From NCBI RefSeq assembly GCF_006345805.1, contig NC_043000.1:127038001-127102000 (forward strand): a stretch of 64,000 nucleotides of DNA. Reading direction: 5' to 3'. The notes beneath the pieces were generated by a model that saw only the letters and a program-made list of their open reading frames with translations, made no database searches and was not told the DNA's origin. Below are positions 29-63,443 of the stretch, piece after piece. A program made the position numbers and the translations under genes. This stretch comes from Octopus sinensis (lineage: Eukaryota). Within the stretch, counting starts at the first letter, position 1. Every line of letters starts with the position of its first letter.

Positions 29-239
29 TTTGATATCGTTCACCCGTTTGTTGGCGTCACTGACCAGATAGGAAATATTGTTATCTTGACTAGAAATATG
101 ATTGGACATTTCTTTGAGCCAGGCCAATATTCCGTCGACTTGGTTTTTGAATTCTTGAATCGACTGATCATTGGTACTAGTGGCAAATAGCTGCTTATTG
201 GCTCTTGTGACCAATTCATCACACTTTTTCTCTGCAGAT
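29..239 (-). CDS. Internal coding exon (211 nt, phase 2/0) of the spectrin-repeat gene: (R)SAEKKCDELVTRANKQLFATSTNDQSIQEFKNQVDGILAWLKEMSNHISSQDNNISYLVSDANKRVNDIK
   Basis: Acceptor ctcttgttatctAG at 241-240 and donor GTAAGT at 28-23. The helix-A signature F...ILAWLKE is typical of spectrin repeats. The track ORF 40..222 is a different, wrong frame. The gene continues beyond the window start. Confidence 0.9.
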
Positions 240-429
240 CTAGATAACAAGAGATTTTTTTGAATTATATTTTCAGCAAACTGATTGCAGTCAATTTGGT
301 TGGATGGCTTGAAGATAAAATGCTAGCTTAGGATGTTTTATAGTGTATTGCATGGTTCAGTGAATTATAGTTCTGAATTGTGTAACGGTTAATTGTGAAT
401 GAGTTTAATCTGTCCAGTATCAATAAGAT

Positions 430-20400: not shown

Positions 20401-22311
20401 GGGTCGATTTGTTTGACTAAAAACTCTTCAAGGCAGTGCTCCAGCATGGCCAGAGTCTAATGACTGAAATGAATGAAATAAAAGAAAGTAAAAGAAAAAT
20501 ACTGGTATCAGATATAATCCTTTCTTCCCAACTGCACAGACACCTACATTTGGTAGCACCCTTATCCATACCACACTGAACAGCCATTCCTATCACATGT
20601 CCCTAGCAGTGCAAGCTTTTGTCCAGCACCTTTCAACTGATGCCTGACTAGCTGTTTGGTTAACCCTTTGATATCAACCCACCTGAAACCACCCTGGCTC
20701 TCTAGTACAAATGATTTGTTTTCAAAATTTCTGAATTAAAATCTTCCACCAAACCTTAGTCACAATTTGTGTTCCTCATGATAACTAAATTATTATTTTA
20801 TTAAATTCTTTGTTATACTCTTTACTTTTTTACTCTTTTACTTGTTTCAGTCATTTAACTGTGGCCATGCTGGAGCACCGCCTTTAGTCAGCAAATTGAC
20901 CCCAGGACTTATTTTTGGAAGCTTAGTACTTATTCTATCGGTCTCTTTTACCAAACTGCTAAGTTACGAGGACGTAAACACACCAGCATTGGTTGTCAAG
21001 TGATGTTAGGGGGACAAACACAGACACACAAATATATATACACACACATACACATATATATACATATATACGACAGGCTTCTTTCAGTTTCCGTCTATCA
21101 AATCCACTCACAAGGCTTTGGTCGGCCTGAGGCTATAGTAGAAGACACTTGCCCACGGTGCCAGGCAGTGGGACTGAACCCGGAACCATGTGGTTCGTCA
21201 GCAAGCTACTTACTACACAGCCACTCCCAATTGAAAAAAACACAGAGTATCTCAACAGAAATATGGAAACAAAAGGGTTACATTACTTTTGTTGATTCTG
21301 TGTTTCAGAGATGCAATTACATTCTGTACCGTGGATGCTGAAACATCTTGTTAACACCCATTGTTTGCACTGTGAACACAGCAAGAAGTTTATGCTTACT
21401 TTATTCTTACATTCAGATCAAGACTTCGTCATAAAAGATTGCACTGAGATTTCACACTTTTATCAGTTATTTCTTGTGCTTCTGGCACGGTGAGCTTTAA
21501 TTCTATGAAATGTAAACCAATTCTTTGAAATTTCTATCATTTTCTATGACAGTGACAGTTTCTGCTATGGAAACTAAATCATTGGAATATGAAATTTATC
21601 ACAGAAACAAGATATGGACTTTTATGTTGTCGCAAAAGAAACTCAAACAACACACTCTGTAGGAATTGAACAAATCCAGGCATAGGAGTGGCTGTGTGGT
21701 TAAGGTGCTTGCTTCTCAGCCATGTGGTCTTGGGTTCAATCCCACTGTGCAGTACTTTGGGCAAGTGTCTTCTACTATAACCCCAGGCTGACCAATGCCT
21801 TGTGAGTGAATTGGGTAGATAGAAATTGAAAGACGTCTGTAACATATATATTTTAAGACCCCCTTCAGTCATGAATGACCATAGGATTGCACCTAGGAAG
21901 TTACCTTCTGAGGCACAAGTCCAAGCAAGATTGTTTTATGGAGGACCAGCAGTCGCCCATGTATACCAGCCTCCCCTCTCCATGTCATCAATGTTATCCA
22001 AGGGAAAGGTAAAGGTTGATACAGCTTGGTACTAGTGACATCGCAACTCGTTTCTACAGCTGAGTCAAATGGAGCAATGTGAAATAAAGTGTCTTGCTCA
22101 AGGATTCAACACACAGCCTTGTCTAGGAATCAGACTCACTACCTCATGATTGTGAGCCCGACGCTCTAATCACTGAGCCATGCACCTTCACTAACATATG
22201 TGTGTGTGTGTGTGTGTGTGTATAGATAGATATAAAAACATATATATACACACACACACACAGAGTTTCGTACATATACACACACACACACTCACATATA
22301 TACACACACAC

Positions 22312-36192: not shown

Positions 36193-36198
36193 TTTATT
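36193..36198 (-). terminator. Candidate polyadenylation signal AATAAA for the terminal exon
   Basis: Plus-strand TTTATT at 36193-36198, about 30 nt past the stop; ATTAAA also at 36126-36121. The region is very AT-rich, so chance occurrence is possible. Confidence 0.45.
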
Positions 36199-36227: not shown

Positions 36228-38081
36228 TTACTTCAGGATTTCTTCTTTAAGTGTTTGTTTCATTTTTTCAGCAATTTTTTTAAGTTGCCGAGATTTTCTA
36301 GTCACTTTCTCAATAGCCTCATCAAGGTGGTACCTGTCCATTACAAGAGATCGTTGATCACGTCTTCGAGAAGAAAATTCATGCTGATGTCTTGGGTGAC
36401 GAGCTGCAAGGTCTAAATCATCATATGAATGCCTGAATGACCTTCTGGATTGTCTTTGAGGAAAGCCATGTGGTGTATATGAAACCTGTTCGCTTTGGTT
36501 TGGTAGGAACTGGTGAGCGGAGGAATTAGCAGAGGAAACATAAGGATTTGAGATATAAGGTGGTGGATTTGTAGGTGGTATTAGGTTCTGAGACTGAGTG
36601 GAATTTCGGGAAATGAATTGTGGTAAATTATTTGAAAAGCCAGAATCAGTCATTGGTTCAGAAGCAACATTTCTATTAATGGATGCTGTTGGACGGTGCA
36701 TGTTTGAAAATCCAAAAGTGGTACCATTCTGCTGCTGCTGATTAGAATGGAATCTTCGTAAATGTGGCTCAGGAAGTTGGTAGCTGCGCAGTCTTTCAAT
36801 ACGTTGACTGATATTGTTTAAATCTTGTTGAGTAACCTTCTTTCTTGAAAATACTGGCCTTGAATTTTGTGTTACAGAATTGAAAGGCGTTTGTGGTCTT
36901 TGAGGAATCAAATACATTGGTTTAGGTGGCACAAAATTAGTGTTATTTCTATACTGTGGTGAGACAAAATTTGCATTACTTTGATTACCATCTGCTTCAG
37001 AAGTCTGCGATGAGTTGCCAGGATGCTGTGCAGCGGTATTCAATTGAATCAGATGAGGAGATGAAACTTCATCATTCTGTTTCGATTCTGGTGATAAAAG
37101 ACTGTTATTTGATACAAGTTTCACATCATTCAGAATATCTTTAAGTTTTTCATGTCTAACGAAATTGACAGAGTTATCCTCACTAAAAGAAGTTTGAGTT
37201 CCTTGGTCAGTATATGTTTGGGTACTTGCATCACAAGTAAAATCTGATTGCTTAATAACACGGACATCTTTCAGGATTTCCTTAAGCATGGTACCATTTA
37301 GAGTTGAAGAAGGAGAATAAACACTGTCAGATATTGTTGAGTTTTGGTCGATTCCTTTGTCTGTTTTTAGGCTTTTTACTTCAAACAGTATGTTTCTTAA
37401 CATATCGCTTTTTGAGCCACTCAGAGATTTTGTTTGTGCCGAAATAGAATGTAAGGAAGTACTAGAGGTTTGCATTGCTCTGCTACGTAACAGTCTTGTC
37501 TGGGTTTGGCCATCGTTAATGGGTAGACTTCTGTTTAAAGAACTAAAAGAGTGAGCAAAAGATTCATTCATTCCGAAATTTTTTGGAGTCTGTGTTCTAG
37601 CATTGCAATGAGTCTGAGAGCTGGTACTCCTCATCCAGCCATCAGTAGATTCATTGATATGATTACTCATAAATGAGATACTGTCTTCAGAATGGCTACT
37701 GTACAAAGTTCTGGTGGAATGAAAACCATCAAAATCAGCATCATTATCTAGAGTAACATCAAAACTAGATGCTTGCATGGTGTTTGTTTCCCCATACCCA
37801 GACTCTTCACTTTCGGATTCAAGCAGCACATTTCTACACTTTAATGATGAATGTGGGCTGAATGTATCTAAACCATACCTCCGTTTTGAGTGTTCACTAT
37901 CTCTTGATGAAGATGGTCTTTGCTGGTAATCAGTGAAGGAAGCACCATTCGCAGAGGGAAATTTTGATGCAAATGGATCAGTATCAGAATCGTCTTCTGA
38001 GTCAGAGGTGAGCCGAGCCCTTCTACCAGGATAGCGGGCAGATGGTTCTGAAGTTTGAGTGGAGTCACACCGCTTGGTTGG
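36228..38081 (-). CDS. Large terminal coding exon (617 aa plus stop), probably an alternative last exon of the spectrin-repeat gene; Ser/Gln/Asn-rich disordered tail with multiple TQT motifs and a C-terminal coiled-coil-like helix
   Basis: The 533-aa track ORF (37829-36228) stays open 84 more codons upstream (PTKRCDSTQTSEPSARYPG...SLKCRN) to a pyrimidine-rich acceptor ...cactctatctaccctccacAG|CCA at 38082. This acceptor is phase 0, matching the 63140 donor. In-frame stops lie just upstream of about 38130. TAA stop at 36230-36228, with AATAAA about 30 nt later. Confidence 0.8.
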   Translation of the reverse strand, partial: PTKRCDSTQTSEPSARYPGRRARLTSDSEDDSDTDPFASKFPSANGASFTDYQQRPSSSRDSEHSKRRYGLDTFSPHSSLKCRNVLLESESEESGYGETNTMQASSFDVTLDNDADFDGFHSTRTLYSSHSEDSISFMSNHINESTDGWMRSTSSQTHCNARTQTPKNFGMNESFAHSFSSLNRSLPINDGQTQTRLLRSRAMQTSSTSLHSISAQTKSLSGSKSDMLRNILFEVKSLKTDKGIDQNSTISDSVYSPSSTLNGTMLKEILKDVRVIKQSDFTCDASTQTYTDQGTQTSFSEDNSVNFVRHEKLKDILNDVKLVSNNSLLSPESKQNDEVSSPHLIQLNTAAQHPGNSSQTSEADGNQSNANFVSPQYRNNTNFVPPKPMYLIPQRPQTPFNSVTQNSRPVFSRKKVTQQDLNNISQRIERLRSYQLPEPHLRRFHSNQQQQNGTTFGFSNMHRPTASINRNVASEPMTDSGFSNNLPQFISRNSTQSQNLIPPTNPPPYISNPYVSSANSSAHQFLPNQSEQVSYTPHGFPQRQSRRSFRHSYDDLDLAARHPRHQHEFSSRRRDQRSLVMDRYHLDEAIEKVTRKSRQLKKIAEKMKQTLKEEILK

Positions 38082-40689
38082 CTGTGGAGGGTAGATAGAG
38101 TGATGAAGTAATAACCATTGGACTCTGAATTTTACTTACTCTATATACAGGACAGAACATGAATCTACTGATATCAACTCAGCTGTGACTATTTCATAAC
38201 AATAACACTAACTCAGGTTTTAGACTGCATCACATAATTATGAAGATTTAAAATACATTTGGTGAATATAGTTTAAAGATTTTTACAGTGTGAACATAGA
38301 AATAAAAAAAAAATGTCATTTTAACTATCAGTCTTATCATGAAGGTTAGTTTTTGTTTTGGCTGAAAAAAAATTTGAAATCTGTTGTTTAAAGAGAATTA
38401 TTAGATTAAATATATAATTGGAGTCAGACAACATTTAGCACCTCTACTAAAAATTAGAAAATTATACAAATTTTATTCCTGCTTTCACTTCTACCAACAT
38501 CTTATTTATCATTATTTTCTTTACATCATCATTGTCATCATCATCATCATCATTGCCACTATTATCATCATCACCAAATATTATCTTCCTGCTCACCCCC
38601 AACAACCCCTATTTTCAACAGTGAAAGAACTGTTGAACAAAAGTGCGTTAAGGTAGCTGCTGCACCACAAACCCCACCATCACCTCATCACAAGCATCGT
38701 TACAATTGTCATTATTATCAAAATTAGCATTATTATCAAAAGTAGGAGCGAAGAATATTGAAAAACAACATAATCACTAGAATCATCATCATTATCATGA
38801 ACAAAACCATTACAACCATTATCATCTTCAACTCTAATAGTTATGTACTGGGGCACAATGCAGTCCTCTGACAGTGAATTCTACCAAATCATCTAAGCTA
38901 TGTTAGCATAGAAGACAGATATTAAATGATGATAATGATAGCTATATCTATATATATATACATACATATGTATACATATATATACAAATACACATATATA
39001 TCTGTGTGTATGTGTTTGTCTATCGGTTGTTTATATTCCAACATTTTACCATGACATTAATTTTCTGCCTAATTTTAAATCACGTTCACAATTTTTTTTT
39101 TTGTTTTCGTGTGCTATTTTAATTACCATTTTCCCAATAGAGCTTCTTGATGAAGGCAACAGCCATTCCCTCTGTCCCTTGTTCCCAATTATATTTCATC
39201 AAAATTGATAGGAACTGTATTCCTGTGTTCTATCTACTTTTCACAAGAATTGCACTTCATTGATCAATAATTAAAATATTATATCTAGTTTATAGTAGTT
39301 ACCAACTCAATAAATTGCTAGAAGATTGGGCAAAGAGACAATAGCTCAAATTCTCTTATTAGCACAATATTCTATGCTTTGAAAAAATAAATAAAAATAT
39401 CCATTTAGGGACCAAATTTGTTAACTTGCACAGTTCAGCTAGAATTCACAAATAATCTACACTTATTTTGTCTACTATTACAACAAGGGTATCTGCTATT
39501 GAGGAGTTACAAACTTTATAAGGTGGCGAGCTGCCAGAAATGTTAGTACGCCAGGCGAAATGCTTAGTGGTATTTCGTCTGCTGCTACATTCTGAGTTCA
39601 AATTCCGCCAAGGTTGACTTTGCCTTTCATCCTTTCAGGGTCGATTAAATGAGTACCAGTTACACACTAGGGTCGATATAATCGACTAAATCTGTTTGTC
39701 CTTGTTTGTCCCCTCTGTGTGTAGCCCCTTGTGGGCAGTAAAGAAATAACAAACTTTATACCACCCAATGAATATACTTCTGTTTCTTTTATCAGCCCTA
39801 CAGGTCCTGCAGTAACCATTTTACCATAACTTTCCTGGTTGTTAGTAGAGTCTCATGGCAACAGATCTAAGAGTGTCATTATAATGTGAAAGGCCAGAGA
39901 TCTAGCAGACTACAAAGTGCACAATGTCTCACAATGATAACAGATAATTTCTTCACAGAGTTTAAAGAAGTTCTGCTTTTATTGCCAATATAGATGCAAT
40001 ATTTAGTTGGCATTTGTTTTTTAATGATCTGGTCTAGAGGAAAGAGCAATCAATGCCTATAACCTTTACAAGAGATGAGAGACAGATGAAGCTCAAAGCT
40101 AGAGAGTTCTCAAGTTAAATATGGCCAAATGTTTTGATGATATGAAGGGTAACAACACTGCTTTCACTTAAGCTATGGAAGTTAAAAAAACCAACAATGT
40201 GTGTGTGACACAGCAGAATAAATCTCCAGAAGAAATAACTAGTGAGGAAGGAACATTGAAGATGGCAGTTATTTAAAACCATTCCCAATGTTATTCAGGA
40301 AGAGCACACTGTTATGTGTTTTGAAAAGTAGAACCATATTCCTGTAGAGAGTGAAAGACTGAAGAGTTTGGTGAAAATAAAAGCAATCACTGGAGCAATG
40401 TAGCAGAAACTGAATGTAAAACTATTAACGCAATGGTTCCAAACATTTCACAAAAGAATTAACTACATTAATTGTTGCTAAAATACAATGATTTAGATTA
40501 TGGTTCTAGACCATTGATCATAAAATTAATGTATTATAAAGCTTTCATTTTAATAGGTGATTTTTGTTGCTGAAACATAGAATACACAATTGGCATCAGT
40601 TACAAGCTGTCAGGATATCATATCTGTCAAAAACACCATGTTCCCCACAATCAAGTAACACTAATTCTCTTGACCTATCATTTGTAAAT

Positions 40690-41340
40690 ATAAAGTCAAT
40701 TATCAGGCACTTTCTGTTCTCTTTATTTACTACTACCAAATCAGGCCTTCTAGCTTCTATTACTCTGTCAGTCTGAATATTTAAAGTTCCACAACATCTT
40801 GTACTTCTTATTTTCCGTACTTCACTAGGTTCATGCTCTAACCATTTATCAGTATGTTCAAACCCTAGCTTTCCCAGTGAATTGCTTTCCCTAGATTGTC
40901 ATGTCTTTTCTTGTATTCTTTCTATGCCAGCATGCTACATTCACTTACTATATGAGGAATGCTTTCTTCTTTTGATTTTCATAATCTACATTGGGAATCT
41001 ACTTGGTTTTTTCTATTTTGGCTTTTATCCTATTAGTCCTTAATGCTTGATCTTATGCAGCTCCTAACAAACTTTCTGTCTCCCTCTTCATGGGAATCTA
41101 CTTGGCTTTTATCCAATCAGTCCTTAATGTTTGGCAGCTACTGACAAACTTTCTGTCTCCTTCTTCAGCTTTTCCTTTCTGCAGCCATAACCATGTCTCA
41201 CTACTACTATTTGCTGAAACTGTCTTTGGGAATCTACCATGCAACGCTTTCTTCTGCCAGTCAGATAATTTCTGTTCTTTTTTCCAGTTTTTAAGTTCAT
41301 TTGGTGCTTTGGTTTCCCTGTCTTGCTGTGACTCTAGTAG
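40690..41340 (-). mobile_element. Decayed non-LTR retrotransposon fragment with CCHC knuckle and restriction-like endonuclease (R2/R4 group, R4/Dong-like)
   Basis: Broken translation DWQKKALHGRF...TWLWLQKG/KLKKETESL...HIVSEC...RHDNLGKAIHWE...IQTDRVIEARRPDLVVVNKENRKCLIID. Contains an internal ~80-100-bp tandem duplication at about 40990-41170. Confidence 0.8.
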
Positions 41341-42635
41341 CTTTTAATAAACTTCATATAAAGCTTATAATAATTTTTATTAAAAGATTTATTAAAAATT
41401 ATTATTATTATTATTGATATTATTATAATTTTATCATTATCATTATTACTTTTCCAAGTCTATATCATATCTTTTCTTTAGTTCTCAAATCATCCAAAGA
41501 ACAAGGGTTTGGAAGTCTGAAATTGTTGGGTTTGAGAAGTAGAGAGACAATTTGAAAGACAGAAAATGCAATCAACATAATTCATAAACGAAATTTTGAT
41601 AAGAGTCAAACTATCTGCATTGTGACTCTCACTAAAGAACAAATATGAAAACAAAAACAACAAAAAACTAGTCTGCAGAATATTGGTGATGTTTTGTGTC
41701 AGCAAAAAAGTCATAAAGTTCAAGAGTTTGGATGAGTTCATTCAGGAAGGGGAAAAAAAGAAAAAGAAGAAGAAGAAAGTTAGATTTTCCTCTCAGATGA
41801 AGGATCAGAACATTAATATCACATTCCTCTTCTAACCATGATATACTAGCTTATGCAAAGTCACGAACTTCATTAGTTAAAGAACAGACACTCATCTTAA
41901 TTTGCATTCAGAAAGTCAACATAAAAAACGGTAAATGGGTGTAAAAATATGCAAAAAACAACAAAATATTGCTTAAACAATTTACATGAAAGTACTATAT
42001 ATTTACATTACTATCCAGTTTATCCATGTTAAGTTGAAAAGTTGATGTAAAATCATGAAAGGTTTGCACGATTTAAGCCATTGTGGGTATAAAATGTCTA
42101 TGATAAAACATTTTCAGAACACATGAAAATAATCATCTAAAAATCTTATCTTTATTTTGATTAATTTTGCAATTTATTGATTTTTTTGTTTTTTATGTGA
42201 TTTTCGTTTCATTCATCTTTCAATTAGACACATTAATTATTCAACAGAATATTCTGTTTACAATTTTGTTTTGTATCAGGTTTCAAAAGACCAATAATAT
42301 TTGAATAATGCCAAATAATAGCTGAAGAACAAAACATAAAATAGGGAATAATGTAGAATAATATTTGAATAATATTGAAAGCTATTTAAATATAATAGAT
42401 TTTATTTAAATGCCTTCTGAAGAAGCAGCAGAGAAAGGAAGGAAAAAAGAAAAAAGGAAAGAGAGAGTATGTATACATGTGTGTATAAGAGTGTGTATGT
42501 GTGTGTTTTCTGAATATGCAAAGGGAACTAAGTAACAGAATTCACTAGACCAAATTATAATCAATTGTAGATAGAATTAAATTGCTCATTTGTAATCCCA
42601 GAAAGAAAGACAATATATAATGAGTGTTCAGTTAG

Positions 42636-52839: not shown

Positions 52840-53900
52840 CAGGCTAGTGATTTAACCTGCAGTGCCGTGAAAAGTTCAAAAGTGTAGTTTGTTCATCTAT
52901 GGTTGTGTGTGTGATGTGATGGATGAGGCTACATAAGTGACACTTATGTAACTAACACACATTGCAAACCAGCTGTCAACTAATGGAATAAACATCTCTT
53001 CTCTTACTTCTCTCATCTCATCTGGTCAATTTTTATATGTACTCTCCAGTAAGTTCAACAGACCATTGATTACAATCCTAGAATGTCTATGAGGTCAATT
53101 GCAAATTATCTCCATGTGTCAGAAGGAATAGTCAGAAATTATATCCACAAAGACGTCAGATATAAGACTTATTTGATGAGGAAAGGTCAATTTGTCAGAA
53201 AAAGCAAAAGAAAACACTACATCAGATCTAAAATGCTCTTAAATAAACTGAAAAATCCAGCAGGAAATTTGATTTGGTTTTTCTCAAATGAGAAAAACTT
53301 TGACCAAGATCAAAAAGTTAACAGAAGAAATGACAGATGGTTATGTGCAGACCCATCAGAAGTTTCAAGTGTTATGTATATAAAATTTCCTGCAACTGTC
53401 ATAGTTTTAGGGGTTATCAGCAATGAAGGACATGTGATGCTTCCTTTCTTCTTTCCCCAAGGCCTTAGAGTTAATCCTGCTGCCTACACTGAGGTTCTGG
53501 AAATAATTGTTAAGCCTTGAATAGACAGTGTATTCAATGGAAGGCCATATGTGTTTCAGTAAGACTCTGCACTATCACACATGCTTCTAGTAACACAGGA
53601 ATGGATGGCTGAAAATTTTCATGATCACATAACCCCTAACATTTGGCCTTCTAATTCCACAGATTTCAATCCATGTGGAGTGTTGTTGAGAGAGAAGCCA
53701 ATGAACATGCCCATTACACCAAAGGTTCTTTGAAAGCTTCCACAGTCAGAGTAATGTTCAAAATTAACCCAGACCACTTGATTTGAGAATGTAGATGATT
53801 TAGATGTCATATAGAAGCATTTGTTGAAGCTGAAGGTGGCTTTATTGAATAACATTATAGAAAAGGTTTATTTTATTTGATAAATAAAGTTATCTGTTAT
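52840..53900 (+). mobile_element. Decayed DD37D (maT-type) transposon
   Basis: WFFSNEKNFDQDQKVNRRNDRW...VIVLGVISNEGHVMLPFFFPQGLRVN...YVFQ*DSA...HITPNIWPSNSTDFNP, with stops and a deletion. Same family as 22390-23110 in the opposite orientation. Ends approximate. Confidence 0.85.
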
Positions 53901-56117: not shown

Positions 56118-56149
56118 AGTTGTTTCTGTTGAATGATCTAACTATACGT

Positions 56150-56296
56150 GCAAGAGTGGCTGTGTGGTAAGATGCTTGCTTACCAACCACATGGTTCCAG
56201 GCTCATTCTCACTGCATGGCACCTTGGGCAAGTGTCTTCTACTAAAGCTTTGTGAGTGGATTTGGTATAGACAGAAACTGAAAGAATCCCATCGTA

Positions 56297-56353
<57 letters not shown>

Positions 56354-56548
56354 GTATGTATATGTTTGTGTGTCTGTGTTTGTCCCCCCCAACATTGCTT
56401 GACAACCAATGGTGGTGTGTTTACGTACCCGTAACTTAGTAGTTCAGCAAAAGAGACCGATAGAATAAGTACTAGGGGTTGATTTGTCGACTAAAGGTGG
56501 TGCTCCTGCATGGCCGCAATCAAATGACTGAAACAAGTAAAAGAGTAA
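56150..56548 (+). mobile_element. SINE family A (tRNA-like head, ccttgggcaagtgtcttc core, internal TA/CA microsatellite, ...aaacaagtaaaagag tail), representative full copy
   Basis: Homologous copies at about 1157-1665 (-, partly duplicated), 11735-11900, 12630-12780, 14825-14920, 15140-15260, 17600-17760, 20200-20480, 20820-21227 (-), 21685-21840, 26020-26250 (-), 27060-27180, 27270-27660, 46500-46770, 52690-52835 and 62095-62220 (-). Confidence 0.8.
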
Positions 56549-56930: not shown

Positions 56931-57496
56931 TTGGGTTGTCCGGAAAGTTTGTGCCGATTTATAGTAGCTTACCTTTCGACTTATTTTAGAACATGGTTGA
57001 GTCCATTAAATAAGATTTGACTGCAACTCCATTTAGAGCACAGTTTAAGCTATCTTTTCGTGGAAGAAGGTTTATGTTCCTATAACCCGTGTTAATTTTG
57101 TAACCCTTTAAAATGGAAGATAAGAAAGGTCATTTTCGGCACTTGATGCTTTGGGAACCAGACAAAAATTGCTGCAGCTCAGCTGGGATATGTTACCCTA
57201 CCCTCCATATTCACCAGATATTGCTCCTTCGGATTTCCACTTTTTCAGATCTCTGCAGAATAGTCTTAATGGTAAAAATTTCAATTCCTTGGATGACGTA
57301 AAAAGATACCTTGATGAATTCTTTGCCATGAAACCCACTCAATTCTGGGAAGACGGTATTTTCAAGTTAAAGAAAAGATGGAGACGCATTGTGCAACAAA
57401 ATGGTTCATATTTGGTTGATTAAAAATGTAATGGCAAGTATTTATTGACCTTTTTCTTTCCTTTAAAAATCGGCACAAACTTTCCAGACAACCCAA
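56931..57496 (+). mobile_element. Internally deleted mariner (DD34D) element, 566 bp, with intact TIRs and TA target duplication
   Basis: TIR ttgggttgtccggaaagtttgtgccgattt and its near-perfect reverse complement, flanked by TA at 56929-56930 and 57497-57498. The N-terminus MEDKKGHFRHLML is joined directly to the C-terminal PPYSPDIAPSDFHFFRSLQN...GIFKLKKRWRRIVQQNGSY motif. Confidence 0.92.
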
Positions 57497-63140: not shown

Positions 63141-63443
63141 TGTAATTTTATCTTCAACAGCCTTTGGAGTTTCTTCCAATTCAATCCTTTCTAATTCTTG
63201 AGCATAATTAGCCAAGTCTCTATCAATTTCCATCTGATGTTCGAGGAAAGTTTTCCGGTCATGTTTCTCACATTCTTTAGCTTCTAAGACATTTCCAATG
63301 TGGCTCAAAATTTCTTCCCAGTCTTCTTGGATTGCTTGAATAATCGGGTCACTTAGTTGTGAGTTATGCTCAGTGAGCCGCCCATAGAGATGCTTCAAAT
63401 CATCAAGGGATTTCGATTTCTCTTCAACTTCACTCTTGAGAAT
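63141..63443 (-). CDS. Internal coding exon (303 nt, phase 0/0) of a giant spectrin-repeat protein (nesprin/spectraplakin-like): ILKSEVEEKSKSLDDLKHLYGRLTEHNSQLSDPIIQAIQEDWEEILSHIGNVLEAKECEKHDRKTFLEHQMEIDRDLANYAQELERIELEETPKAVEDKIT
   Basis: Acceptor ...aaacAG at 63445-63444 and donor GTAAGT at 63140-63135. 101 open codons of amphipathic helical, E/K/L-rich composition, with a Trp in a helix-C-like position (QEDWEEIL). Family assignment rests on the repeat pattern only. Confidence 0.9.

What the first reader, a model, noticed from the sequence alone, without database searches (positions are those of the whole stretch)
36228..38081. Alternative tail is a predicted multivalent LC8/dynein-light-chain scaffold
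Seen: five TQT motifs (CDSTQT, NARTQT, DGQTQT and the tandem DASTQT-YT-DQGTQT) plus variants (AMQTS, SAQTK, SSQTH) in a Ser/Asn/Gln-rich, disorder-like sequence. There is also a PPPY motif and a terminal helix (LDEAIEKVTRKSRQLKKIAEKMKQTLKEEILK). Established knowledge: TQT is the anchor of LC8 (DYNLL1/2) ligands, multivalent partners such as ASCIZ and Nup159 carry such arrays beside self-association helices, and PPxY binds WW domains. Inference: this exon would replace the normal C-terminal anchor of the giant protein with an LC8-dimerised hub.
Basis: partly seen in the sequence, partly recalled or inferred. Interest (0 to 1): 0.75.

Follow-up and report, generated by a model that had tools for sequence, protein, structure and literature searches.

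The report
Conserved LC8-motif tail on nesprin-like gene
A 617-residue, mostly disordered coding exon sits inside a large intron of an octopus spectrin-repeat (nesprin-like) gene and carries eight deeply conserved "QT" sites that look like docking sites for the dimerising hub protein LC8, so it is a good but untested candidate for a new LC8-zipped, anchor-less form of a giant cytoskeletal linker.

Summary
The minus-strand frame 38081..36228 encodes 617 aa plus a stop. It has five TQT (shuffles give 0.25, P about 1e-5), the SQT/MQT/AQT variants, PPPY and a terminal helix. It is a real coding exon: it follows a good splice acceptor, dN/dS is 0.23 against a second octopus, and about 24 homologues exist, named ones from octopus and the sea slug Elysia.

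Eight QT sites are conserved across the family. Conservation peaks at Q0 (0.86) and T+1 (0.84) against 0.43-0.58 in the flanks. Two further QT in the octopus tail are not conserved. All eight sites lie in AlphaFold-disordered stretches between five predicted amphipathic helices. On a rough PSSM built from published LC8 binders, m8 (TDQGTQTS) beats every published non-binder; four sites score mid-range and three score weakly.

The exon lies between two same-strand, phase-0 spectrin-like exons. A gastropod database protein (P0026) joins the upstream-exon homologue directly to the tail.

Weak points:
- LC8 binding is untested.
- No octopus RNA evidence was available.
- Host identity rests on sub-threshold nesprin/ANC-1 Pfam hits.
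- No KASH exon is in the window.
- PPxY is not conserved.
- The twin sites are only 8 residues apart.

Verdict: a new candidate member of a known kind (multivalent LC8 client), of moderate interest.

The parts
36228..38081 (-). Terminal coding exon ('tail'): 617 codons plus a TAA stop at 36230..36228
   Evidence: Open frame and translation. dN/dS is 0.23 against another octopus, L007. About 24 homologues were found.
38082..38106 (-). 3' splice site: polypyrimidine tract plus CAG directly before the first codon (phase 0)
   Evidence: tcatcactctatctaccctccacag|CCAACC. Homologous exons in L004-L008 are likewise preceded by intron-like sequence.
38049..38072 (-). m1, RCDSTQTS (Q9): TQT site at the very start of the exon
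   Evidence: xRCRSTQTP is present wherever the exon start was captured. PSSM score is 13.0 in octopus, family median 15.3. It resembles the Bim motif CDKSTQTP listed.
37608..37631 (-). m2, RSTSSQTH (Q156): S/T/C-QT site, first half of twin 1
   Evidence: Q and T conserved in 0.96 of sequences. Position -1 is S, T or C. PSSM score 10.4.
37584..37607 (-). m3, CNARTQTP (Q164): TQT site, second half of twin 1, exactly 8 residues after m2
   Evidence: Position -1 is T, I or V across the family. Spacing is 8 in all 23 sequences. PSSM score 11.9.
37494..37517 (-). m4, NDGQTQTR (Q194): TQT site
   Evidence: Q conserved in 0.96 of sequences; degraded to AQQ in the two decapod-like sequences. PSSM score 12.1.
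37464..37487 (-). m5, RSRAMQTS (Q204): [MLVI]-QT site, non-canonical anchor
   Evidence: Present in 13 of 24 sequences and absent from one tight subgroup. PSSM score 8.8.
37428..37451 (-). m6, HSISAQTK (Q216): LHSIG[ANS]QT site, non-canonical anchor
   Evidence: Q 0.96 and T 0.92 conserved. Fixed 12 residues after m5 and 12-14 residues before L228 of helix 1. PSSM score 4.5, which is poor.
37212..37235 (-). m7, CDASTQTY (Q288): TQT site, first half of twin 2
   Evidence: Conserved in 0.96 of sequences; position -1 is T, V or S. PSSM score 14.4.
37188..37211 (-). m8, TDQGTQTS (Q296): best-scoring TQT site, second half of twin 2, 8 residues after m7
   Evidence: PSSM score 18.3, above all 30 published non-binders and at the 91st percentile of binders. 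Conserved in 0.96 of sequences.
37758..37823 (-). LESESEESGYGETNTMQASSFD: the most conserved block of the tail, function unknown
   Evidence: Invariant columns S89-T101 and A104-D108 in A1. It lies in the low-pLDDT part of the model.
37359..37412 (-). Predicted helix 1 (aa 224-241), amphipathic
   Evidence: AF2 helix. L228, L232, V235 and K239 are invariant in 24 sequences. 4 of 5 a/d positions are hydrophobic.
37248..37295 (-). Predicted helix 2 (aa 263-278), same xxL[KR]xIL.DV[KR].[LIV]K pattern as helices 1 and 3
37110..37172 (-). Predicted helix 3 (aa 304-324), directly after twin 2
36783..36830 (-). Predicted helix 4 (aa 418-433), pLDDT about 94
   Evidence: AF2. R427, L431 and Y434 are invariant in 24 sequences. 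4 of 4 a/d positions are hydrophobic and 0 of 12 elsewhere.
36555..36566 (-). PPPY within a proline-rich stretch
   Evidence: Present in the octopuses. The homologous site is PPQY in one decapod-like sequence and two others, QPQY/QPEY/PPQF in further sequences, and absent in the gastropod-like group.
36234..36329 (-). C-terminal helix (aa 585-616), pLDDT 94-97, ending 1 residue before the stop
   Evidence: AF2. L600, K601, M607 and L611 are conserved. The hydrophobic pattern is heptad-like.
36193..36198 (-). AATAAA about 30 nt after the stop: a possible poly(A) signal, weak evidence in AT-rich DNA
63141..63443 (-). Upstream spectrin-like exon A (101 codons, phase 0 at both ends, ...VEDKIT|gtaagt)
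   Evidence: It is homologous to the part of P0026 directly before its tail. The P0026 N-terminal part is modelled as spectrin repeats.
29..307 (-). Downstream spectrin-like exon B (93 codons, phase 0 at both ends)
   Evidence: ttcaag|CCATCC ... ATCAAA|gtaagt. It contains ...EFKNQVDGILAWLKEM... and gives a weak Pfam Spectrin hit, E=0.012.

Best explanation
The region is a spliced, translated 3'-terminal exon. It lies in a roughly 63-kb intron of a same-strand spectrin-repeat gene, most likely the mollusc nesprin/ANC-1/MSP300-type gene. When the upstream exon A is joined to it instead of to exon B, the giant protein ends early in a 617-residue tail.

The tail is intrinsically disordered apart from five short amphipathic helices. 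It carries eight conserved QT-anchored linear motifs: m1; the twin m2/m3; the cluster m4-m5-m6; and the twin m7/m8.

Proposed mechanism (inferred, not shown): LC8 (DYNLL) dimers bind these motifs on two parallel tail chains and zip them, together with the helices, into an in-register dimeric ladder. This would dimerise and stiffen the end of an isoform that lacks everything downstream, including any membrane anchor. About 4-6 LC8 dimers per duplex are expected rather than 8, because the sites within each twin are back-to-back. LC8 would act as a dimerisation clamp, not as a motor adaptor.

Shown here: the exon, the purifying selection, the motif enrichment, the anchor-specific conservation, the predicted disorder, the genomic nesting and the phase compatibility. 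Shown by one database record: the exon A-to-tail join. Inferred: LC8 binding, stoichiometry and loss of a KASH anchor.
For: - Motif enrichment: 5 TQT against 0.25 expected and 12 QT against 3.4 expected. The same excess is seen in all 24 family members.
- Anchor-specific conservation: mean column conservation is 0.69 at -1, 0.86 at Q0 and 0.84 at T+1, against 0.43-0.58 at the flanks and 0.44 for other Q/T residues. None of 100,000 random sets of 16 positions reached the observed value.
- Internal control: the QT at aa 359 and 397 are not conserved.
- Substitutions at -1 are T/V/I/S/M/L. This matches the published consensus [T/V/I]-1 Q0 [T/V]+1 (abstract of PMC3078936) and the rules of PMC6607443. 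P/D/E at +2 is common at m1-m4.
- All eight sites lie in pLDDT<50 segments, and helices flank them.
- A PSSM built from 70 cellular binders and 30 non-binders (Table S4 of PMC6607443) places m8 above every non-binder. m7, m1, m4 and m3 fall within the binder range.
- Weak non-canonical sites can still bind in a multivalent, short-linker context (KANK1; PMC12057147).
- The exon is coding: dN/dS is 0.23 overall, and 0.15 in the motif region and in the C-terminal helix.
- It is a terminal exon: the stop falls right after the last helix in every homologue.
- It needs an upstream coding exon: m1 and the invariant acidic block precede the first Met (M102).
- Nesting and phase.
- The join: window exon A plus tail aligns collinearly, with no gap at the junction, to P0026 (E=5e-27).
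- Spectrin fold of the P0026 N-terminal part: AF2 plus Foldseek best hits are utrophin and dystrophin repeats with TM 0.74-0.78; nesprin-2G is also listed.
- Nesprin/ANC-1-specific Pfam models give the best hits, although below threshold.
Against: - No binding data exist, and neither LC8Pred nor AlphaFold-Multimer could be run here.
- The home-made PSSM separates published binders from non-binders only partly: medians are 14.6 and 9.4, and the best non-binder scores 15.5.
- m5, m6 and partly m2 have anchors (MQT, AQT/NQT, SQT/CQT) that score as non-binders. Yet they are as conserved as the TQT sites, so part of the constraint may come from another reader.
- The twin spacing of 8 residues is shorter than the shortest verified inter-site arrangement, a 3-residue linker between 8-10-residue motifs.
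- No RNA evidence could be obtained for the octopus exon A-to-tail junction.
- Two annotated gene models (O. bimaculoides P0001, 'MWL...'; Elysia chlorotica P0015, 'MGVLDLLDTW...') treat the tail as a separate gene with a tiny first exon.
- In Elysia the exon-A homologue and the tail could not be placed within 10 kb of each other.
- Host identity as a nesprin is below Pfam thresholds, and no KASH or CH exon is in the window.
Confidence: 0.55

Rival explanations
1. The exon belongs to a separate nested gene with its own promoter and a short first exon inside the intron. It would make a free protein of about 620 aa that is never joined to the giant spectrin-repeat protein. This protein could still be an LC8 client. 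Both transcript types could also coexist.
For: UniProt A0A0L8I860 (P0001) and E. chlorotica RUS76923.1 (P0015) are annotated as stand-alone proteins of 621 and 555 aa with short unrelated N-termini. The window holds ATGTGGTTG|GTAAGC at 56192..56184 on the minus strand, which would encode the 'MWL' of P0001. Human nesprin genes use many internal promoters (PMC3388047).
Against: The candidate MWL exon lies in a SINE-like repeat that recurs in the window and looks like an ab initio first exon. The two models' N-termini are unrelated to each other. P0026 joins the spectrin exon directly to the tail at the homologous junction. Exon A and the tail are both phase 0.
Confidence: 0.25
2. The conserved QT sites are not LC8 sites. 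They could be an SQ/TQ cluster phosphorylated by ATM/ATR-type kinases, or docking sites for a different and perhaps unknown reader.
For: Six of the eight sites have S or T before Q in octopus, and they are clustered. Three sites (m2, m5, m6) are as conserved as the canonical ones but score poorly as LC8 motifs. The 8-residue twin spacing is invariant and does not fit known LC8 arrays.
Against: Conservation is highest at Q0 and T+1, not at the residue before Q that a PIKK would phosphorylate. At m5 that residue is M/L/V/I and at m6 it is A/N/S, so these are often not phosphorylatable. An invariant T after Q is not a known PIKK requirement (my own knowledge) but is the LC8 anchor. ASCIZ shows that the two readings are not exclusive.
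Confidence: 0.15
3. The open frame is a chance ORF or a decayed remnant with no function.
For: No Pfam family matches it, and the sequence is low in complexity and Ser/Asn/Gln-rich.
Against: A 617-codon open frame in 36% GC DNA is unlikely by chance. dN/dS is 0.23 while the flanking intron is about 89% identical. Homologues down to 30% identity keep the same blocks and the same stop position.
Confidence: 0.01

Closest known systems
Nup159 DID-Dyn2 (yeast nucleoporin with a tandem LC8-motif array)
   Same: Several closely spaced QT motifs in a disordered segment of a large structural protein. Linkers are short: 4-5 residues in Nup159, and 2 and 4 residues in the m4-m5-m6 cluster here. The proposed role is the same: LC8 dimers zip two chains into a stiff ladder.
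   Different: There is no sequence homology; the profile search found only about 24 relatives, all tail-like. Here the sites are split into four groups separated by 30-150 residues and by helices. Binding is untested.
ASCIZ/ATMIN (7-11 TQT motifs in a disordered SQ/TQ-rich C-terminus)
   Same: High motif count, a mix of strong and weak sites, variable linkers, and overlap with SQ/TQ-cluster character.
   Different: ASCIZ is a zinc-finger transcription factor that senses LC8 level. Here the array is the end of a cytoskeletal spectrin-repeat protein. The shortest ASCIZ linker is 3 residues, whereas the twins here have none.
KANK1 L2 linker (15 or more weak LC8 sites forming rods; bioRxiv 10.1101/2025.07.16.665182)
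   Same: A scaffold protein whose disordered linker is proposed to be turned into a rod by cooperative binding of LC8 to individually weak, non-canonical sites. This is precedent for m5 and m6 contributing.
   Different: KANK1 has almost no canonical TQT. This tail has five canonical TQT per chain and far fewer sites. There is no homology.
KASH-less nesprin-1/2 variants made by alternative termination (Rajgor et al. 2012, PMC3388047)
   Same: A giant spectrin-repeat gene produces shorter isoforms that end inside the rod and lack the KASH anchor. Internal promoters are also used.
   Different: The human alternative ends are mostly retained-intron read-throughs that add a few residues, for example AGAGYPHQ. 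Here a separately spliced exon adds a 617-residue tail conserved between cephalopods and gastropods. A link between a nesprin and LC8 was not found in the literature searched.
Bim/Bmf-type single LC8 motif (CDKSTQTP, EDKATQTL)
   Same: m1 in most family members (PCRSTQTP, RCRSTQTP) is nearly the same 8-mer as the Bim site listed.
   Different: Bim has one site that regulates sequestration. Here m1 is one of eight sites and sits right at an exon junction.

Membership tests
Multivalent LC8 (DYNLL) client | Two or more 8-10-residue motifs with a TQT-type anchor ([T/V/I]-Q-[T/V]) | tested here: met
   Five TQT plus SQT, MQT and AQT sites. The family-wide -1 residues T/V/I/S/M/L fit the published consensus.
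Multivalent LC8 (DYNLL) client | Motifs lie in intrinsically disordered sequence | tested here: met
   All eight sites fall in AF2 segments with pLDDT<50. This is a proxy for disorder, not a measurement.
Multivalent LC8 (DYNLL) client | Flanking positions compatible with binding (polar at -4, large or positive at -3, no bulky aromatic at -2, P/D/E at +2) | tested here: inconclusive
   On the rough PSSM from Table S4 of PMC6607443, m8 scores 18.3, above all non-binders. m7, m1, m4 and m3 score 11.9-14.4, in the zone where binders and non-binders overlap. m2, m5 and m6 score 4.5-10.4, which is weak. LC8Pred itself was not available.
Multivalent LC8 (DYNLL) client | Anchors conserved more than linkers in orthologues | tested here: met
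   Q0 0.86 and T+1 0.84 against flanks 0.43-0.58; no random position set reached this. Non-motif QT are not conserved.
Multivalent LC8 (DYNLL) client | Inter-site linkers long enough for neighbouring LC8 dimers (3 or more residues in verified cases) | tested here: not met
   This holds for the two twin pairs: Q0-Q0 is 8 in every sequence, whereas motifs are 8-10 residues long and the shortest verified linker is 3. The m4-m5-m6 cluster (spacing 10 and 12) is borderline. The test limits the likely occupancy; it does not rule out binding.
Multivalent LC8 (DYNLL) client | Physical binding to LC8 with defined stoichiometry | not testable with these tools
   No multimer prediction with LC8 and no experiment was possible.
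Nesprin/ANC-1/MSP300 isoform ending in an alternative 3' exon (KASH-less) | Host gene is a nesprin (CH domains, nesprin-type spectrin repeats, KASH) | tested here: inconclusive
   Only sub-threshold hits were found: PF25034 Spectrin_SYNE1 (P0026 E=6.5e-6 at 26 bits against a 35-bit cut-off; P0061 E=2e-3) and PF24611 Spectrin_Anc-1 (P0064 E=3e-4). The fold is spectrin-like. No CH or KASH exon is in the window.
Nesprin/ANC-1/MSP300 isoform ending in an alternative 3' exon (KASH-less) | Exon lies in an intron of the host, on the same strand, with a splice acceptor and a compatible phase | tested here: met
   Exon A (63443..63141) ends in phase 0, the tail starts in phase 0 after ...ccacag, and exon B (307..29) starts in phase 0.
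Nesprin/ANC-1/MSP300 isoform ending in an alternative 3' exon (KASH-less) | Transcript joining host exon to the tail | tested here: inconclusive
   One database protein of a gastropod (P0026, UniParc UPI0005AE4041) has the join. Its basis, RNA or model, is unknown. All retrievable contigs were genomic. There are no octopus RNA data.
Nesprin/ANC-1/MSP300 isoform ending in an alternative 3' exon (KASH-less) | In-frame stop and polyadenylation signal in the exon | tested here: met
   The stop is conserved right after the last helix in all homologues. AATAAA lies about 30 nt downstream, which is weak evidence in AT-rich DNA.
SQ/TQ cluster domain (PIKK substrate) | Conserved S/T immediately before Q at the clustered sites | tested here: not met
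   Position -1 is M/L/V/I at m5 and A/N/S at m6. Conservation peaks at Q and the following T, not at -1.
PPxY ligand of WW domains | Canonical [LP]PxY conserved at the homologous position | tested here: not met
   PPPY occurs only in the octopuses and PPQY in three other sequences. Elsewhere the site is QPQY, QPEY or PPQF, or is absent.

The most novel reading that the evidence does not exclude
Molluscs make an ancient, lineage-specific isoform of their nesprin-type giant linker in which the distal rod and the KASH anchor are replaced by an LC8-zipped tail. This would be the first nesprin-LC8 connection. The strictly conserved back-to-back twin sites, with anchors exactly 8 residues apart, would represent an LC8 binding mode not yet described: either two dimers with no linker, or a register switch between two overlapping sites.
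Probability: 0.2. Interest if true: 0.65.

Novelty: new member of a known kind. Interest (0 to 1): 0.5.

Why it matters
If confirmed, this adds a structural giant of the nucleus-cytoskeleton linker family to the clients of the LC8 hub. It would also show that a long, spliced, deeply conserved tail, rather than a few read-through residues, can replace the distal part of such a protein.

For the LC8 field it offers a natural array with several useful features:
- five canonical and three non-canonical anchors;
- invariant spacings of 8, 12 and 12 residues;
- interleaved helices.

That makes it a good test case for how linker length and weak sites set occupancy. For cephalopod biology it flags an uncharacterised protein (UniProt A0A0L8I860 in O. 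bimaculoides) with a concrete, testable function.

Tried and rejected
- Pfam on the tail gave nothing above noise.
- A word-index search with exons A+B joined found no protein, so the canonical A-to-B join could not be confirmed from databases.
- The search with the P0026 N-terminal part returned only unnamed Elysia models.
- PDB sequence searches with P0026 and with profile A3 gave nothing useful.
- Contig look-ups aimed at finding spliced transcripts returned only genomic contigs, with intron-like sequence before the exon. P0001 and P0026 are not on record as genes.
- I tried to show exon-A-to-tail linkage in Elysia. The E. chlorotica locus has no exon-A homologue within 11 kb upstream of the tail. 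The E. crispata locus has no tail within 11.6 kb downstream of the exon-A homologue. The two flanks share no coding segment. This neither supports nor refutes linkage.
- A translated comparison of the whole window with the squid-like and bivalve-like loci found no other conserved exon near the tail.
- A literature search for the run accessions, meant to identify the species, found nothing.
- No paper links nesprin to LC8/TQT, and SYNE1/2 are not in the supplementary tables of the LC8Pred paper, which include its human scan.
- The idea that one chain's twin sites fill both grooves of a single LC8 dimer was rejected. In LC8 ladders the two grooves take two parallel chains, and an 8-residue spacing leaves no linker to loop between grooves (the second point is my inference).
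- FFAT, LIR and W/Y-acidic readings of the invariant ESESEESGYGET block were considered from memory. None fits consistently across the family, and none was tested.
Full report
**1. What is at the coordinates**

The window is AT-rich, repeat-laden eukaryotic DNA. On the minus strand, 38081..36228 is an open frame of 617 codons ending in TAA. It starts immediately after a polypyrimidine tract and CAG (tcatcactctatctaccctccacag|CCAACC). It therefore reads as an exon that begins at a 3' splice site in phase 0.

- TQT at aa 8, 163, 193, 287 and 295;
- SSQTH, AMQTS and SAQTK;
- PPPY at aa 506-509;
- the terminal helix.

Against 100,000 shuffles of the same residues, five TQT (mean 0.25) and twelve QT (mean 3.4) are strong excesses, with P about 1e-5 and 2e-5.

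**2. It is a real, translated exon**

The closest database protein is an uncharacterised Octopus bimaculoides protein, A0A0L8I860 (P0001, 94% identity). The window therefore comes from another Octopus species or a diverged copy.

Against the genomic contig of a further octopus (L007), the exon has dS 0.21, dN 0.047 and dN/dS 0.23. By region, dN/dS is 0.15 for aa 1-330, 0.34 for aa 331-560 and 0.15 for the C-terminal part. The upstream intron is about 89% identical.

An exhaustive HMMER profile search of 1.84 billion representatives found only 24 proteins, and the longer hits that were inspected are tail-like. Named members are from Octopus and the sea slug Elysia chlorotica. Two other sequence groups (about 43% and 31-37% identity) look like decapod cephalopods and other molluscs, but their species could not be established. 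Pfam has no model for the tail.

**3. The QT sites are the conserved feature**

In alignments of 13 and 24 sequences, eight sites line up:

| Site | Family pattern |
|---|---|
| m1 | xRC[RDG][SG]TQT[PS] |
| m2 | [STC]QT |
| m3 | [TIV]QT |
| m4 | TQT |
| m5 | [MLVI]QT |
| m6 | LHSIG[ANS]QT |
| m7 | [TVS]QT |
| m8 | [TS]QT |

- Mean column conservation is 0.69 at -1, 0.86 at Q0 and 0.84 at T+1. At positions -6..-2 and +2..+4 it is 0.43-0.58, and for the other 26 Q/T residues of the N-terminal 320 aa it is 0.44. None of 100,000 random sets of 16 positions reached the observed value.
- The low figure for m1 is an artefact of truncated gene calls. Reading the genomic contigs shows RKCRSTQTP or RRRCRSTQT at the very start of the exon in those species too.
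- The QT at aa 359 and 397 of the octopus tail are not conserved and serve as an internal control.
- Every family member has 2-5 TQT against 0.1-0.45 expected.

**4. Do they look like LC8 sites?**

Published rules ask for the following (PMC6607443; abstract of PMC3078936):
- a buried T/V/I at -1, Q at 0 and T/V at +1;
- P/D/E at +2;
- no bulky aromatic at -2;
- a large or positive residue at -3;
- a polar residue at -4;
- location in disordered sequence.

The family's substitutions at -1 (T, V, I, S, M, L) and the frequent P/D/E at +2 of m1-m4 fit these rules.

AlphaFold2 on the 13-sequence alignment gives pLDDT<50 for 493 of 617 residues. It predicts five helices at aa 224-241, 263-278, 304-324, 418-433 (pLDDT about 94) and 585-616 (pLDDT 94-97). 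All eight sites are in the low-confidence stretches.

I built a simple log-odds PSSM from the 70 cellular binder 8-mers and 30 non-binders in Table S4 of PMC6607443, leaving out the viral and phage entries. Leave-one-out binders have a median score of 14.6. Non-binders have a median of 9.4 and a maximum of 15.5.

| Site | Score |
|---|---|
| m8 TDQGTQTS | 18.3 |
| m7 | 14.4 |
| m1 | 13.0 |
| m4 | 12.1 |
| m3 | 11.9 |
| m2 | 10.4 |
| m5 | 8.8 |
| m6 | 4.5 |

m1 has a family median of 15.3 and is close to the Bim site CDKSTQTP. This is one clearly binder-like site, four plausible ones and three weak ones. The PSSM is not LC8Pred and separates the two training classes only partly. Weak non-canonical sites are known to bind when embedded in a multivalent, short-linker array (KANK1).

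**5. Spacing**

The following distances hold across the family:
- Q0-to-Q0 is exactly 8 for m2-m3 and for m7-m8 in all 23 sequences.
- It is 12 for m5-m6.
- It is 12-14 from m6 to L228 of helix 1.
- It is 8-11 for m4-m5.
- Other linkers vary.

LC8 motifs are 8-10 residues long. The shortest verified linker between occupied sites is 3 residues; linkers of 6-9 residues give homogeneous complexes, and Nup159 has 4-5. The twins therefore have no linker and probably hold one LC8 dimer at a time, in either of two registers. The alternative is that they do something not yet described. My estimate is 4-6 LC8 dimers per duplex. This is an inference.

**6. The helices**

Helices 1-3 share the pattern xxL[KR]xIL.[DE]V[KR].[LIV]K and place hydrophobic residues at a/d-like positions. 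L228, L232, V235 and K239, together with R427, L431 and Y434, are the only columns invariant in all 24 sequences. Self-association elements next to LC8 sites are typical of LC8 clients (my own knowledge). Whether these helices pair was not tested.

**7. Relation to the giant gene**

On the same strand the window holds two further exons with good splice sites, both in phase 0 at both ends:
- Exon A, 63443..63141: aaacag|ATT...ACA|gtaagt, 101 codons.
- Exon B, 307..29: ttcaag|CCA...AAA|gtaagt, 93 codons.

The tail also starts in phase 0, so both A-to-tail and A-to-B are in frame.

P0026 is a 518-aa fragment held in UniParc, 67% identical to Elysia crispata models. It consists of spectrin-type sequence whose last 100 residues are homologous to exon A, followed without interruption by RRRCRSTQTP... 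and the ESESEESGYG block. The hypothetical window product 'exon A + tail' aligns to it collinearly, with no gap at the junction (E=5e-27).

The N-terminal part of P0026 is modelled as long helical repeats. Its best structural matches are single spectrin repeats of utrophin and dystrophin (TM 0.74-0.78), then spectrin and plectin, with nesprin-2G also listed. Everything after residue 337 is disordered.

The best Pfam hits of P0026 and its relatives are the nesprin-1 and ANC-1 repeat models, all below the curated cut-offs.

The first Met of the octopus tail is M102. It comes after m1 and after the invariant acidic block, so the conserved N-terminal part can only be translated from an upstream exon. 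The stop follows the last helix in every homologue, and AATAAA lies about 30 nt downstream.

Human nesprin genes are known to produce many KASH-less variants by alternative termination, but mostly by intron read-through that adds a few residues (PMC3388047).

**8. What remains open**

- No RNA evidence for the octopus junction could be reached. Every retrievable contig was genomic.
- Two annotations treat the tail as a separate gene with a tiny, mutually unrelated first exon (P0001 'MWL', P0015 'MGVLDLLDTW'). The window does contain ATGTGGTTG|GTAAGC at 56192..56184 on the minus strand, but it lies inside a recurring SINE-like repeat.
- In Elysia, the exon-A homologue and the tail are each more than 10 kb from the other, if they are linked at all.
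- The host's nesprin identity and its KASH anchor are not demonstrated here.
- PPxY is canonical only in the octopuses and three other sequences, so WW binding is not a family feature.
- The three non-canonical QT sites are as conserved as the canonical ones. This may reflect multivalent LC8 binding or a second reader. An SQ/TQ kinase-site reading fits less well, because conservation peaks on Q and the following T, and the residue before Q is often not S or T.

**9. Verdict**

The core interpretation, a multivalent LC8-binding disordered tail used as an alternative end of a spectrin-repeat giant, passes every test that could be run here, but it remains a prediction. I rate it a new candidate member of a known kind (multivalent LC8 clients; alternative-termination isoforms of nesprin-type genes). 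Confidence is 0.55 for the combined statement: roughly 0.7 for LC8 binding at some of the sites and 0.65 for the join to the giant protein. Interest is 0.5. No nesprin-LC8 link was found in the literature searched.

Noticed in passing
window 37823..37758 (-), aa 87-108 of the tail: The most conserved block of the family is not a QT site. It is LESESEESGYGETxxTMxASSFD, an acidic Ser cluster followed by [DE]SGYG[ED]T. From memory it resembles a CK2-primed beta-TrCP-type phosphodegron ([DE]SGxxx[ST]). Its function is unknown.
   Followed up: partly
window 37631..37584 (-) and 37235..37188 (-): The two twin QT pairs (m2/m3 and m7/m8) have anchors exactly 8 residues apart in all 23 sequences. m5-m6 and m6-helix 1 are also fixed at 12 residues. 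This spacing constraint is tighter than in any verified LC8 array that I could find described.
   Followed up: partly
window 37412..37110 (-): Three predicted helices share xxL[KR]xIL.[DE]V[KR].[LIV]K (LRNILFEVKSLK, LKEILKDVRVIK, LKDILNDVKLVS). This is an internal repeat of a short amphipathic helix.
   Followed up: partly
window 56192..56184 (-): ATGTGGTTG followed by GTAAGC would encode the 'MWL' that begins the O. bimaculoides gene model A0A0L8I860. It lies in a SINE-like element that recurs in the window (for example 1229-1633, 21000-21341 and 56137-56490). It may be an ab initio first exon or an exonised repeat.
   Followed up: partly
window 53053-53517 (+) and 57124-57420 (+): These are transposase-like ORF fragments. 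The second ends ...PYSPDIAPSDFHFF..., which I recognise from memory as mariner/Tc1-like, and it matches a DDE_3/Transposase_1 gene next to the tail homologue in locus L001. Pfam on the fragments themselves was weak or empty.
   Followed up: partly
window 40599-41343 (-): ORF remnants rich in K/R/E that resemble decayed retroelement coding sequence. No Pfam hit was found.
   Followed up: partly
L010 12200-17750 (Elysia crispata): The intron upstream of the exon-A homologue holds a long tandem array of a unit of about 43 nt. One gene model (P0062) partly translates it as its N-terminus (MSPLIPISVPPLHPYV...). This is an annotation artefact in that record.
   Followed up: no
P0023 (442 aa, source species unknown): The most divergent full-length family member keeps the acidic block, m2-m4, helix 1 and the C-terminal helices. 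It lacks m6 and the m7/m8 twin. The array is therefore not all-or-none across the family.
   Followed up: no
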